A stretch of 64,000 nucleotides of DNA, taken from the NCBI RefSeq assembly GCF_026571515.1, contig NW_026862686.1, positions 1-64,000 on the forward strand. Reading direction: 5' to 3'. This document shows positions 50,799-63,910 of this stretch, piece after piece (position 1 is the first letter of the stretch; each line of letters starts with the position of its first letter). The notes under the pieces are model-generated. The model did not search any database. It was not told the origin of the DNA and saw only the letters and a list, made by a program, of their open reading frames with translations. This DNA comes from Ruditapes philippinarum (taxonomy: Eukaryota). The translations under genes and the position numbers were made by a program.

Positions 50799-50992
50799 AG
50801 TTTATACAGAATTTATTTTCGTGCGATTGTATAGGAACTTAAAGCGTATAAACATACTATCGGATCCTGAGCAATGAGTGTAAAGTTTCTTGCTCAATGA
50901 AATAACGCCTTGTCTCTGACAGCGTTCGAGTCCTTACGGCTAGGGGTCCTTAGGTTACTAGGCGCGTTAACAACTCGGCTATGCCGCCAGAC
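50799..50992 (-). mobile_element. tRNA-derived SINE inserted in copy B exon 25
   Basis: A-box-like GGCATAGCCGAGTTG, B-box-like GGACTCGAACGC, core TGAGCAAGAAACTTTACACTC shared with 36490, tail AAAATAAATT..TAAACT; flanked by AAACA (50993-50997 and 50794-50798). Confidence 0.8.
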
Positions 50993-53900
50993 TGTTTGCT
51001 ATGCTCTGGAGTTTAAAAATAGTCAACTCTCGTATCTCTTTTGTTCCCATGGCAATATCAAATCCCCTTTTCAGAGTGTTTTTGACCTCAGCGCTCATCA
51101 ATGAATCAATTCCAAGGTCACCTAAGCTGGCATCAGGATTAACAGAGCTTGGTTCTTCAATGCCTTAATATAAATTTAAAATAAGTTTTATATACAAAAG
51201 TCTAGCATCTAGCAAATTATGTACCGTATATTTTTCAGTTTTAAAACAAATATTGAGAGCAGAGATTTAGTTGACAAGACATTAAATGTGTTTTACTCTA
51301 CAATTTAATTAACAACATCAATCAGAAAAGTGAAATTTCTTTTCAAAACTTTCTAAAAGAAACACTTAAGCATTTACAAACACAACTGCGTAACCTGTGC
51401 AGGTACTTCCATACAAATTTTAAGAACAGTTTATTCATAACTTCTCTATAAAATTTAAACCCTTTCCTTGGACTAACTTGATCTCTAAATTTCTTTTACA
51501 TCATTTTTTTTCATATTGAGATTCAATTAAATTTATCACAGCTCTAAACTTGTATCATTTCAAGATAAAAAGACAAGAAAATGATTAATGTTACCAAGAA
51601 TATGACAAACAGCTAAAACCAGATCAATTTCATAGTCACTGGCATTGTTACTGTCTATCTGCTTATCTGCTGGCACAAAACTTGACACAACTGGTTCCAA
51701 CTGGTTCAAGAACATGTCAAGGGTATTCAAACAGGAAGCGATGCGCTGTGGAAGTGTTCCACCAATAACAGTATCATTATCTCCCATGGACTCAAGAACT
51801 ATCCCTACATCACCAATAGCACCCCACTGAATGGCAAGACCTGTGAGAGTCAGTTGATACTCTTTAGTATAAAAATTCAAATATGCATCTTTGAATAATA
51901 TTTAATGGTCAATTTGAAGCTGCTAAAAACATCCTTATTCCTATAAGTGGCGTACAAATATGGTAAATGTTACAAGTAAACTTATTTCTACAACATTTTT
52001 GGTCTGAGACACTAAACAAAATCTGCAGAAACCATACCAAAATACTACTAATGGTCCTTTCTGTAGAGGGATAGGGGAAGTGGTAGAGATTTCAAAATAT
52101 GATTAACAAGATCAACAAGGAAAGGCGGCGTTCAATGAACGCAACCCCCATATGACCCAGCAACAAGTACTAGTGGCAAGGAGCCCAGGCGGACCCCAAA
52201 CAAAAACAGGACAGGGCACAAGTCAGCACGGACAGTTTAATCACTAAATGATAAGTCACACCATCGCTGTTAAGGTAAAATTTCTGAGAAAGGCTTTAAT
52301 CAAATGCATCTTTGTGAATTATTTCAAGCATGAGCCATGAGGGTACCAAAGTAGAACAAATGACCTTCTTAATCTTCCTCATTCCTTGATGCATGGTATT
52401 TATGAAAGTAGGTAGGTTACTAATATAATATATCACTACTAGTGCAGTAGGTCACTAATATAAAGCATTTTCACTTGTAAACCTTGAAATATCATTTTAA
52501 TAGTTATGCTGCAGATTAACAAGATAAACTTTTTTTTAATTTACCATGTAATCTATCTTTTTTCCTTTTCTCACAAATACGTTCCATTGCAGAATTTGCA
52601 AAGCCATAATTTGTCTGGCCTGCATTGCCACGCCCACAACTGATAGATGAGAACACAACGAACCAATCACAACTCTCCTTACAAAACTCTCTGGTACCCT
52701 GATCAAGGTTTATTGTTCCCGTCACTTTTGGTTCGCAAACCTTTTGGAAGTCTTCTAGAGTCAAGTTTTCTAAAAAGCCATTTTTTAATACCTGAATTAA
52801 AAAATAAAATATTAGAATAATACAAATCAATATATACCAAAACTGTATAGACAGGTCCTGTTTTCTACAATTTTACCGCTTTGCCAAAAGTGGCAACCGT
52901 TTGGCAGGGGTGGGGGAGGGGTCGATATTGTATATTACATAACTGACAGAATAAAAAAAAACAATATAAAACATCTGATATAGGTGAATAATCAAATTCT
53001 TTTATTCATATGAAGGAATATGTTTCTACTATAGCACCCAATTGTATATGTAAATAATTTTTATCAGTTATTATGAATATAATATATTTATGAGAGGTTT
53101 TTATCATAAATCTTCGGCATATAATATAAATATTGGATGGTAGTGTGCTACAAAATGGCGGCCAGTGGAGGTAATAATTGCCAAGTTGAAAAACATATAT
53201 AATGCCTGATGTTCATTTTTCATCCAATCATCAATAAATCACTCAAAATGCAACAAAAAAAACATTCAGATACAACACTCATCTGCGAAAAGGTTGATAA
53301 CATATTTATATTGGTTCTATGTTGATGCCTTAAACCAGTTTGTAATGTTATTTATCATTTATCAGCTCTATTTTTAATATTCAATAATTTGGGTAATCGT
53401 CATATTTACAGTCGGGAGTGTTGTCGAATAAAATAAGAAATTAGAAATTCCGGGCTAACATAATCATTTTCGATAACAATGAATTTGCATAGAAATTGAT
53501 CGAAACCGAATATTAAGCAAAATGAAACCAGTTCTACAGTTATTGGTATTTTTTATTCTGTTATCTTTTGGACAGGTTGTATGATAAACCTAAGCGAAAT
53601 AAGTCATTATTCATTTATTATAACAGTTTCTAATTATCTTTTAACATGGTTTTCAAACAATCACCAGGAATATTTAACGTTTTTATTCCTTTACACAATT
53701 AAAGCGGGAAATAAGCTCACCATTGCAAGATGAAAGACTCCTCCCACTGGCTTAGTACTGGTCTTGGCAAGCAGGTATCTAACGTCCTCTTTCTTTGTCA
53801 CATTTCTTGTTGATACTATAACATCTACCCCTAAATTCTGTAACAACATGCATAGTTGTATGTTTTTATATACATTGTATATTCAAAATTAAACTTTAAA

Positions 53901-62900: not shown

Positions 62901-63910
62901 ATGACTTTAAACAACTTACTTTCCAAGACTTGAAAGACAGAAATCTACATTATCTGCATGTGTTCGTTTCATCAAGCCCACAATACAACAATCCTTTGAA
63001 AGTGATCTCTTCAAGATTGCTTGTAGAAGACAGTGCGGAGCAATCTCAATCACAACAGCATTATTAGGTACATGCTTCAATGCCTCCTGGAACAGTACCG
63101 GACTGACAAGGTTGTTCACATGGTAGTCGGCTGAAGAGTGCTTGGCAAGGTCAGTGGACCAGTTAGCCTCCGGTATTGAGGAACTTATCCATCTTGCTGA
63201 TCTCTCCTTGGGGCTTTTGATAACCTATAAGATTGTAAGATTGTAAAGAAATTTATTTGATTTATTGATCTCAAGTAAAAATAACAAATTTCTTGTAACA
63301 TATAAAGATCGAGGTTTGGCTTCCAATTCATGTTTACGCTAAGTAAGTTTGCATTATTTAAGGCACGAACAAATAACAAGAAGAACTACCAGAATTTCAC
63401 ATAAAATAATTTTATAACACTGATCTCTGACCAACATGGTTAGCTCAACAAAACAATGTAATCTTGAGTCCGATAATAATTCCATTGTCACAGGTATTGC
63501 TTGCCCAATAAGTGAATAACATATTCTTTCTATGCATTTGTGATAAAATTGTTAAAATTATATACATATAAATATATAAATAAAGATAGGACTTATCTGC
63601 TCTAATTCATTGTAAACTGTCTTTGTATTGTCATTACGTTACTTACTACAAAAAATAATTGATAAGAATAAGTATCTTACCTTAGTTAAAGCAGTTTTTA
63701 GTGAAGCAGCTACTTTTTGCATGTAGAAAGAATGGAAAGCCACTCCTGCAGTATTTACTTCTTTGGCAAATATTTGTCTCTCTTTAAGCTCATTTACAAA
63801 CTGCCTGACTGCATCCCTGGGACCAGAGATTGTCACAGTATCTATGGCATTGTGACAAGCTGGTACTACGCCCTCTGGACATTGCTCTAGGGCCTCTTGC
63901 CATGTTAAAC
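50979..63910 (-). CDS. FASN: Second FAS paralogue (copy B), 5' part outside the window: AT-DH(inactive)-psiMT-ER(degenerate)-KR-ACP with no TE; FAS-like PKS candidate or young pseudogene
   Basis: Minus-strand exons matching copy A exons 10-25: 63681-63910, 62920-63224, 61120-61502, 60437-60685, 59881-60048 (12 nt shorter), 57847-59077, 57263-57399, 56550-56845, 55886-56244 (1 nt longer), 55355-55477, 54862-55085, 54378-54593, 53721-53837, 52545-52791, 51595-51840, 50979-51163. All introns are GT-AG. The ACP reads ...[48 protein letters not shown] with TAG at 50979-50981. Confidence 0.9.
61730..62880 (-). mobile_element. Old degenerate HINE with tandem units (copy B intron)
   Basis: ACAACAGCTGTCGGTAGGAC end, decayed ~115-bp periodic units, ..ACTATTCTTTGAAAAGTCGAGCTAAA end. 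Confidence 0.55.

What the first reader, a model, noticed from the sequence alone, without database searches (positions are those of the whole stretch)
50979..63910. FAS duplicate remodelled into a TE-less, DH-dead megasynthase: a possible FAS-to-polyketide synthase transition
Seen: copy B keeps the exon boundaries, splice sites and nearly all exon lengths of copy A. Its AT ([13 protein letters not shown]), KR (TGGLGGFG; K, S, Y, N) and ACP (DSL) motifs are intact, while lesions concentrate in DH, ER and TE. Established: animal FAS-like PKSs (e.g. bird MuPKS, sacoglossan EcPKS1) arose from FAS-like scaffolds by inactivating processing domains and often lack a TE. A KS-AT-KR-ACP core with dead DH would yield beta-hydroxy (polyol or lactone) products, and ER has no substrate without DH. 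Inference: this could be a young, lineage-specific PKS-like enzyme next to its parent gene. The alternative is recent pseudogenisation. The KS lies outside the window and cannot be checked.
Basis: partly seen in the sequence, partly recalled or inferred. Interest (0 to 1): 0.9.

Follow-up and report, generated by a model that had tools for sequence, protein, structure and literature searches.

The report
Expressed FAS paralogue lacking thioesterase, dehydratase-dead
Next to the ordinary fatty acid synthase gene of this (probably mollusc) genome lies an old inverted copy that has lost its release domain and its dehydratase catalytic histidine yet is still spliced, transcribed and held by selection, so it is probably a working, re-purposed enzyme and not a dead gene, although one frameshift in the assembly is still unresolved.

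Summary
Copy B (minus strand, C11173 78395 to 50979; KS exons lie beyond the window) keeps all 24 introns with GT/AG. 22 of its 25 exons have the parental length. The KS Cys/His/His, AT, ER NADPH, KR and ACP motifs are intact. The DH catalytic His is Tyr and the motif Pro is Ser. An old dispersed repeat right after the ACP supplies a stop codon, and the four TE exons are absent.

New points:
- "Copy A" and contig C2933 are dovetailing haplotigs of one canonical FAS locus.
- B is not young: dS reaches 0.5 in exons untouched by gene conversion.
- B shows purifying selection: ω is 0.25 overall, 0.11 in KS and 0.15 in ER, with no nonsense codon in 2235 codons (about 5 expected after only 2% neutral drift).
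- RNA contigs from three studies carry B-specific, correctly spliced exons and the ACP-to-repeat junction.
- The assembly has two 1-nt frameshifts in B, in KS exon 6 and ER exon 18. An independent contig encodes B-type exon 6 with an open frame. The ER insertion could not be checked.

Verdict: probably a functional TE-less, DH-inactive FAS paralogue (about 0.55). A recently inactivated pseudogene is the main rival (about 0.3). A polyketide-like product is untested. Only this window's own first-reader notes touched this locus.

The parts
8693..39305 (+). Copy A: canonical FAS gene, 29 exons, KS to TE (GYSFG, GDH present). It is allelic to contig C2933. It carries 10 one-nt homopolymer indels clustered in E15-E17 (about 25.9-28.2 kb) that look like assembly errors.
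63681..63910 (-). Copy B exon 10 (AT, part). Exons 1-9 (KS, linker, start of AT) lie outside the window at C11173:68913-78395.
62920..63224 (-). Copy B exon 11 (AT; [13 protein letters not shown])
61120..61502 (-). Copy B exon 12 (DH N-terminal half). The catalytic His is Tyr (TAT at 61273-61271) and the motif Pro is Ser (TCA at 61246-61244).
60437..60685 (-). Copy B exon 13 (DH)
59881..60048 (-). Copy B exon 14 (DH C-terminal half). The LDTMLQ Asp and Gln are kept. A net 12-nt in-frame deletion lies just after them.
57847..59077 (-). Copy B exon 15 (non-catalytic pseudo-ME/pseudo-KR region), 1231 nt, open frame
57263..57399 (-). Copy B exon 16 (no B-specific substitutions; gene-conversion tract)
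56550..56845 (-). Copy B exon 17 (ER N-terminal part)
55886..56244 (-). Copy B exon 18 (ER, GSGGVG). An extra A at 56239 (GGTCTAGC has become GGTCTAAGC) shifts the frame in the assembly.
55355..55477 (-). Copy B exon 19 (ER). B-specific RNA contigs join it to E18 and E20.
54862..55085 (-). Copy B exon 20 (ER)
54378..54593 (-). Copy B exon 21 (ER end / KR start)
53721..53837 (-). Copy B exon 22 (KR; TGGLGGFG region)
52545..52791 (-). Copy B exon 23 (KR; VLRD is VLKN here)
51595..51840 (-). Copy B exon 24 (KR; S, Y, N)
50979..51163 (-). Copy B exon 25 coding part: ACP (GIDSL), then ...QSIAN-SLAA-stop. The TAG at 50981-50979 lies inside the inserted repeat.
50798..50996 (-). About 199-nt dispersed repeat inserted into exon 25 after the ACP (boundaries +/-4 nt). 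It supplies the stop codon and an AATAAA at about 50815-50810. There are at least 593 candidate copies in the genome, 71-81% identical to this one.
50636..50797 (-). Decayed remnant of the rest of exon 25 (ACP-TE linker): one stop codon, 4-5 indels, 16% mismatches. It serves as an internal neutral control.
46932..47269 (.). Assembly gap (N run) in the spacer between the two tail-to-tail copies, flanked by minisatellites

Best explanation
Copy B is an old, lineage-specific inverted (tail-to-tail) duplicate of the canonical animal FAS gene. It survives as an expressed, selectively constrained paralogue of about 2235 codons with the order KS-MAT-DH(inactive)-pseudoME/pseudoKR-ER-KR-ACP and no thioesterase. 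Shown: the architecture, the loss of the DH His and Pro, the old repeat-borne stop codon after the ACP, B-specific spliced transcripts, dN/dS well below 1, and mosaic gene conversion with the parent. Inferred: the two 1-nt frameshifts in this assembly are errors or alleles of this one individual. The protein can still load, condense and keto-reduce, but it cannot dehydrate or hydrolyse its product. On its own it should therefore stall at a beta-hydroxyacyl-ACP. That intermediate would be released by MAT back-transfer to CoA, or extended to beta-hydroxy/pyrone-type products. Alternatively B acts as a heterodimer partner of the canonical FAS. The strong conservation of the ER would then reflect its structural (dimer-interface) role, recent gene conversion, or both.
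For: All 48 splice dinucleotides and 22 of 25 exon lengths are kept. There is no nonsense codon in 2235 codons, against 5.5 expected after 2% and 25 after 10% neutral divergence (P(0) = 0.004 and <0.001). dN/dS of B against the parent is 0.25 overall: KS 0.11, AT 0.16, DH 0.24, ER 0.15, KR 0.26, central region 0.44. In the least-converted exons dS is about 0.5 with ω 0.06-0.10 (E6, E19, E21). Polarised replacements run 69 on the B side to 31 on the parental side, which is relaxed but not neutral. The exon-25 remnant behind the repeat has a stop and about 25 indels per kb, against about 0.9 per kb in the retained CDS. Other copies of the repeat are only 71-81% identical. TE loss is therefore old and the rest of the gene was kept afterwards. 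RNA contigs of three studies match B perfectly in E19 and E22, join E18-E19-E20 and further exon pairs from E20 to E25 at the predicted sites, and cross the ACP-repeat junction. P0207, from an independent JGI contig, encodes B-type exon 6 (EAHATGT, GDTQEMNAICDV) with an uninterrupted frame across the site of the assembly's deletion. P0182 is 99% identical to B's exon 7. Copy A shows a cluster of homopolymer indels with almost no substitutions beside them, so this assembly does contain indel errors.
Against: The assembly has a +1 A in ER exon 18 (56239) and a -1 in KS exon 6 (about C11173:71793). Either would truncate the protein. No B-type read or contig covering 56239 was obtained. The E17/E18 junction contigs without the extra base carry the parental letters at the diagnostic sites that were listed. 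The only in-frame rescue needs a weak GTTTTT donor and was not among the joints shown. Gene conversion from the parent (E2, E8, E11, E16-E18, E20) inflates apparent constraint in those exons. Contig depths cannot rank expression. No product or activity is known.
Confidence: 0.55

Rival explanations
1. Recently inactivated, still transcribed pseudogene. B functioned for most of its history as a TE-less paralogue, but the ER +1 insertion (and perhaps the KS deletion on some haplotypes) is real and has now killed it.
For: Both frameshifts are in the assembly. Both are isolated, not part of an error cluster like the one in copy A. No B-type contig lacking the extra A was seen. B evolves about 2.2 times faster than the parent at the protein level. 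Catalytic-site hits accumulate: DH His and Pro, KR LRD to LKN, KS DTACSSS to DAACSSS and HGTGT to HATGT.
Against: Zero nonsense codons and zero splice-site losses mean any neutral phase is below about 1% divergence. B-type exon 6 is open in an independent contig. B-specific transcripts are spliced, and their contig depth is similar to parental-type contigs, so there is no obvious nonsense-mediated decay (weak evidence).
Confidence: 0.3
2. Long-dead partial duplicate that only looks constrained because gene conversion from the adjacent functional FAS keeps overwriting it.
For: There is a clear mosaic. E16 has no B-specific change, and E2, E8, E11, E17, E18 and E20 have 2-3%, against 10-12% in E6, E15, E19 and E21. 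An inverted neighbour is a good conversion partner.
Against: The exons that escaped conversion (dS about 0.5) have the lowest ω (0.06-0.10) and no stops or frameshifts apart from the exon-6 deletion, which is not seen in P0207. The DH, KR and KS motif changes and the repeat were not erased. The unconverted remnant behind the repeat shows what neutral decay looks like here.
Confidence: 0.08
3. Assembly artefact: B is a misassembled or haplotypic version of the single FAS gene.
For: The assembly does hold an unmerged haplotig pair for the parental locus (C11173:1-33 kb against C2933:30-0 kb).
Against: B has its own introns (only exon flanks align, about 85%), its own repeat insertion and an inverted orientation on the same contig. 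B-specific DNA and RNA contigs and proteins occur in independent data sets.
Confidence: 0.02

Closest known systems
Canonical animal type I fatty acid synthase (FASN; pig FAS 2VZ9, human FASN)
   Same: Same exon structure and domain order as the parental gene in this genome, about 93% protein identity to it (226 of 2222 compared codons differ), and the parent is about 50% identical to bird FAS. The KS, MAT, ER, KR and ACP catalytic motifs are kept.
   Different: [quoted passage not shown] The DH catalytic His (H878 of the human DH catalytic dyad; an H878A mutant is assayed for DH activity in PMC10258763) is Tyr. KR VLRD is VLKN.
Animal FAS-like polyketide synthases (AFPKs), e.g. sacoglossan EcPKS1/EcPKS2, mollusc clades 1-3 (PMC7280274, PMC10764717)
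   Same: FAS-like multidomain scaffold, no TE, altered processing domains, offloading without a thioesterase.
   Different: AFPKs are old, separate clades, which PMC10764717 places on the evolutionary route from PKS to FAS. B sits inside the FAS clade as a derivative of the resident FAS. AFPK clades 1-3 are reported from heterobranch gastropods.
Engineered DH-dead human FASN (H878A; PMC10258763)
   Same: Loss of the same catalytic histidine. In that paper MAT is shown to move a hydroxybutyryl group between CoA and the ACP, which is a possible release route for a TE-less enzyme.
   Different: It is a laboratory point mutant with TE. B also changes the motif Pro and deletes 4 codons after the DH Asp/Gln motif.
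Mite FAS-like protein KAI1291794.1 (Halotydeus destructor; P0081)
   Same: It has Tyr at the same DH catalytic position (DYCVDG) in a FAS-like protein of 2211 aa.
   Different: Only 43% identical to the parental FAS. It has also lost the DH Asp motif. Its TE status was not examined.
Budgerigar MuPKS (from memory, not checked here)
   Same: A vertebrate FAS-like or PKS enzyme used for a specialised product (pigment).
   Different: An old, separate PKS lineage, not a recent FAS duplicate.

Membership tests
Animal type I FAS | Domain order KS-MAT-DH-pseudoME-pseudoKR-ER-KR-ACP, homologous to FASN | tested here: met
   Pfam hits on the exons, tblastn to bird FAS P0099, and exon-by-exon alignment
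Animal type I FAS | C-terminal thioesterase domain | tested here: not met
   Stop codon 41 residues after the ACP Ser, inside an inserted repeat. No TE exon found between 39.4 and 51.2 kb on either strand. A 338-N gap at 46932-47269 cannot be searched.
Animal type I FAS | DH catalytic His in HxxxGxxxxP plus the Asp/Gln motif | tested here: not met
   His is Tyr and Pro is Ser. The Asp and Gln of LDTMLQ are kept.
Animal type I FAS | KS Cys-His-His, MAT Ser/Arg/His, ER and KR NADPH motifs, KR K/S/Y/N, ACP Ser | tested here: met
   Neighbouring changes: DTACSSS to DAACSSS, HGTGT to HATGT, VLRD to VLKN.
Animal type I FAS | Uninterrupted reading frame | tested here: inconclusive
   The assembly has -1 in E6 and +1 in E18. 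E6 is open in the independent contig protein P0207. The E18 site is not covered by any B-type sequence.
AFPK (animal FAS-like PKS) | Membership of the AFPK clades by KS phylogeny or KS-HMM score (PMC10764717) | tested here: not met
   No tree was built, but B's nearest relative is the resident canonical FAS: 23 of 408 KS codons differ. Every other full-length protein aligned is at most 50% identical to the parent. B therefore branches inside FAS.
AFPK (animal FAS-like PKS) | No TE; non-fatty-acid (polyketide) product | not testable with these tools
   The absence of a TE was met (above). The product is unknown.
Pseudogene | Neutral evolution (ω about 1, stops, lost splice sites) | tested here: not met
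   ω 0.11-0.44, 0 stops, 0 splice-site losses, simulation P(0 stops) <= 0.004
Pseudogene | No, or aberrant, transcripts | tested here: not met
   B-specific contigs with canonical joints in RNA runs X15, X16 and X19

The most novel reading that the evidence does not exclude
A canonical animal FAS gave rise, within one invertebrate lineage, to a TE-less, DH-inactive iterative synthase that makes a beta-hydroxy or polyketide-like (non-fatty-acid) product. This would be an independent and comparatively recent FAS-to-PKS-like transition, caught with its parent gene next door and still exchanging sequence with it.
Probability: 0.2. Interest if true: 0.85.

Novelty: new variant of a known kind. Interest (0 to 1): 0.6.

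Why it matters
Current work (PMC10764717) places animal FAS-like PKSs on an old evolutionary route from PKS to FAS and states that every animal FAS has a thioesterase. A selectively maintained, transcribed derivative of the resident FAS that lost its TE through a repeat insertion and lost its DH catalytic histidine would show the opposite direction of change. It would show it at a stage where parent and derivative can be compared residue by residue: DH His to Tyr, KR LRD to LKN, KS DTACSSS to DAACSSS. That gives a small, testable set of substitutions for asking how a fatty acid synthase is re-programmed. If the ER frameshift turns out to be real and fixed, the locus is instead a well-dated example of a long-lived paralogue just after its death. 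That would be ordinary, though still useful as a caution about homopolymer indels in this assembly.

Tried and rejected
- The E17/E18 RNA joint without the extra base looked like proof that the ER insertion is an error. I rejected this because, at the diagnostic sites the table listed (56143, 56151, 56595), every covering RNA contig carries parental (A/C) letters. X15's junction contig has the parental letter at 56595. X19's junction contig is untyped.
- An apparent compensated -1/+1 pair in exon 7 is an alignment artefact. The exon translates openly.
- Two metagenome-contig scans for the exon-18 site found nothing: one exact pattern with an optional base, one degenerate peptide pattern. The tool notes that records of this genome may be left out.
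The DNA of the contigs behind P0174 and P0207 could therefore not be read, and no outgroup CDS was available for a branch model.
- ARAGORN and Rfam gave nothing on the inserted repeat, so 'tRNA-derived SINE' is not shown.
- TE exons were sought in the 11-kb spacer on both strands by tblastn and blastn. None were found.
- Alternative acceptors at 56236, 56230 and 56223 do not restore the frame with the canonical donor. Only a weak GTTTTT donor at 56546 would, and it is not among the joints shown.
- The exon-15 search in the 90%-clustered protein database found no B-type or parental-type sequence (best hit 70%). The length window probably excludes short contigs.
Searches were made exon by exon by reference. 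Joined exons were used only inside local scripts, for translation, alignment and dN/dS.
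Full report
**Where things are**

The window is G000:C11173:1-64000, in a 1.4-Gb, 15,874-contig animal assembly. One run that holds a small share of the stretch's words is labelled 'mollusc metagenome'.

A six-frame self-comparison and blastn show two FAS genes tail to tail:
- Copy A lies on the plus strand, 8693-39305.
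- Copy B lies on the minus strand, from C11173:78395 down to 50636. Its KS exons lie beyond the window; I fetched them as L006-L008.

A third copy, on contig C2933, is 91-96% identical to A including the introns. Its first 30 kb dovetails with the first 33 kb of C11173. A and 'C' are therefore two haplotigs of one canonical FAS locus. The C allele is completely open from E1 to E23 and carries every catalytic motif. A supplies an intact TE (GYSFG, GDH).

A also carries ten 1-nt homopolymer indels clustered in E15-E17. In the second half of E15 there are no substitutions at all beside them. That pattern is what consensus errors look like, not what decay looks like. Single-base indels in this assembly therefore cannot be taken at face value.

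**Gene model of B**

I placed junctions with bird FAS (P0099) as a guide and checked them across the three copies. B has 25 exons.
- All 24 donors are GT and all 24 acceptors are AG.
- 22 exon lengths equal the parental ones.
- E6 is 1 nt short (CCC has become CC, about C11173:71793).
- E14 is 12 nt short, which keeps the frame.
- E18 has one extra A at 56239.
- E25 carries a ~199-nt insertion.

Read in the parental frame, B has no nonsense codon in 2235 codons.

Motifs in B:

| Domain | State in B |
|---|---|
| KS | DAACSSS / EAHATGT / KSNMGHSE; Cys-His-His kept |
| MAT | GHSVGE, YWRG, AFHS kept |
| DH | [10 protein letters not shown] in place of [10 protein letters not shown]; the LDTMLQ Asp and Gln are kept; four codons are deleted just behind them |
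| ER | [10 protein letters not shown] kept |
| KR | TGGLGGFG and K/S/Y/N kept, but VLRD has become VLKN |
| ACP | GIDSL kept |

After ...QSIAN the frame runs into the insertion and stops (SLAA-TAG, 50981-50979).

The insertion is a dispersed repeat. It has at least 593 candidate copies in the genome, which are only 71-81% identical to this one. In DNA run X4 the summed contig depth at 50700-50899 is more than a thousand-fold that of the unique bins of the stretch. The repeat contains an AATAAA. It has no tRNA or Rfam match.

The rest of exon 25 survives behind the repeat as a wreck: one stop, 4-5 indels and 16% mismatches in 160 nt. The four TE exons are found nowhere in the 11-kb spacer. The spacer consists of minisatellites and a 338-N gap.

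**Age and selection**

Pairwise dN/dS of B against the parent is 0.25 overall:

| Region | dN/dS |
|---|---|
| KS | 0.11 |
| AT | 0.16 |
| DH | 0.24 |
| Central non-catalytic region | 0.44 |
| ER | 0.15 |
| KR | 0.26 |
| ACP | 0.28 |

The three-way site patterns are a mosaic. E16 has no B-specific change. E2, E8, E11, E17, E18 and E20 have 2-3%, while E6, E15, E19 and E21 have 10-12%. This means gene conversion between B and the parental locus. Constraint in the converted ER exons E16-E18 and E20 therefore proves little.

The unconverted exons carry the argument. E6, E19 and E21 have dS of about 0.5 with ω of 0.06-0.10. Using six outgroup proteins to polarise replacements gives 69 on the B side against 31 on the parental side. 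With the closest exon-15 relative, P0174, the counts are 45 against 24. B is relaxed about two-fold, to roughly ω 0.3, but it is not neutral.

A simulation on the parental CDS gives 5.5 expected stop codons after only 2% neutral divergence (P(0) = 0.004) and 25 after 10%. The 96 splice-site bases would also have been hit. The remnant behind the repeat shows what neutrality looks like at this locus, and the repeat copy is old. B therefore lost its TE early and was kept by selection afterwards.

**Expression**

I laid contigs of three RNA-type runs from three studies, plus one independent DNA run, on window 50700-56699.
- In the RNA runs the introns are almost empty and the exons are covered.
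- Canonical joints were seen for seven consecutive introns, E17/E18 to E23/E24, and a joint within 2 nt of the predicted E24/E25 site. The E17/E18 joint seen is of the parental type (see below).
- Several pieces are B-specific: E19 with no mismatch (B differs from the parent at 12-15 of its 123 nt), the 3' part of E18, and E22.
- Contigs cross the ACP-to-repeat junction, a junction that does not exist in the parental gene.

Many other laid contigs are parental transcripts cross-mapping at 95% or more. This includes those over the first 100 nt of E18. At the E17/E18 joint, X15's junction contig carries the parental letter at 56595, and X19's junction contig could not be typed. The absence of the extra A in those junction contigs therefore says nothing about B.

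**The two frameshifts**

If real, the exon-6 deletion would stop translation 20 codons later, before the KS histidines. An exon-wise protein search returned P0207, from an independent JGI contig. It has the B-type residues (EAHATGT, GDTQEMNAICDV, SEPTS) and an uninterrupted ...ACIDPTQISYVEAH... across the site. P0182 is 99% identical to B's exon 7. The KS deletion is therefore an assembly error or a private allele.

The ER insertion could not be tested. No B-type contig covers 56239. No alternative acceptor restores the frame with the normal donor.

**Reading**

The most likely reading (0.55) is a functional, long-lived FAS paralogue without TE and without DH activity. The main rival (0.3) is that it has just died. 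Conversion-maintained junk (0.08) and an assembly artefact (0.02) fit poorly.

What the enzyme does is inference. With KS, MAT, KR and ACP intact and DH dead, the chain should stop at a beta-hydroxyacyl-ACP. In human FASN, H878 belongs to the DH catalytic dyad, an H878A mutant is assayed for DH activity, and MAT moves hydroxybutyryl between CoA and the ACP (PMC10258763). That offers a TE-free release route. TE-less AFPKs offload without a TE, possibly by spontaneous pyrone formation (PMC10764717).

It may reflect the ER's structural role in the FAS dimer (from general knowledge of the pig FAS structure), heterodimers with the canonical FAS, or conversion.

**Comparison with known families**

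B is not a canonical FAS, because the TE and the DH His tests were not met. It is not a member of the AFPK clades either, because it branches inside FAS, next to the resident gene. It works like a nascent AFPK. I rate it a new variant of a known kind, with interest 0.6.

Noticed in passing
window 1-33000 against C2933:30025-1 (L009-L012): The start of contig C11173 and the start of contig C2933 overlap end to end in opposite orientation at 91-96% identity. This is an unmerged haplotig pair, so the canonical FAS is counted twice in this assembly.
   Followed up: yes
window 25900-28160 (copy A exons 15-17): Ten one-base homopolymer indels against the allelic contig, with no substitutions beside them in the second half of exon 15. 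This is probably a poorly polished stretch, and a warning for any frameshift call in this genome.
   Followed up: partly
G000 contigs C12144, C7609, C8002, C10351, C3460 (two), C14781, C7836, C15626, C13765: Ten acyltransferase-domain hits lie in open frames without stops, seven of them 1400-2370 aa long (three are shorter: 532, 603 and 1435 aa). They look like intronless type I PKS-like megasynthase genes. A further multi-exon FAS-like gene lies at C8208:281.7-286.9 kb.
   Followed up: no
window 52094-52254 (intron 23 of copy B): A 160-nt repeat with many copies 93-98% identical elsewhere in the genome. It looks like a young, high-copy element, and contig depth spikes there in all runs.
   Followed up: no
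window 45340-46929 and 48568-48948: Minisatellite arrays (32-33-nt and 43-nt units) fill the spacer between the two FAS copies. The first array abuts the 338-N assembly gap.
   Followed up: no
P0023 (Sinanodonta woodiana KAL3877602.1, annotated fatty acid synthase): This freshwater-mussel 'FAS' lacks the KS active-site Cys (QGSDAAS in place of DTACSSS) and the first KS His motif (EANAIGH). It is a KS-dead FAS-like protein.
   Followed up: no
window 55535-55538 (intron 18 of copy B), run X4: An independent DNA data set has about 96 extra bases here relative to the assembly, an indel polymorphism in the intron.
   Followed up: no
window 51595-51840 (exon 24), RNA runs X15 and X16: The spliced contigs are B-like in E22-E23 but differ from B at 14-16 positions in E24. 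Some of these letters are parental and some match neither copy. This may be a divergent B allele or a conversion tract in other individuals.
   Followed up: partly
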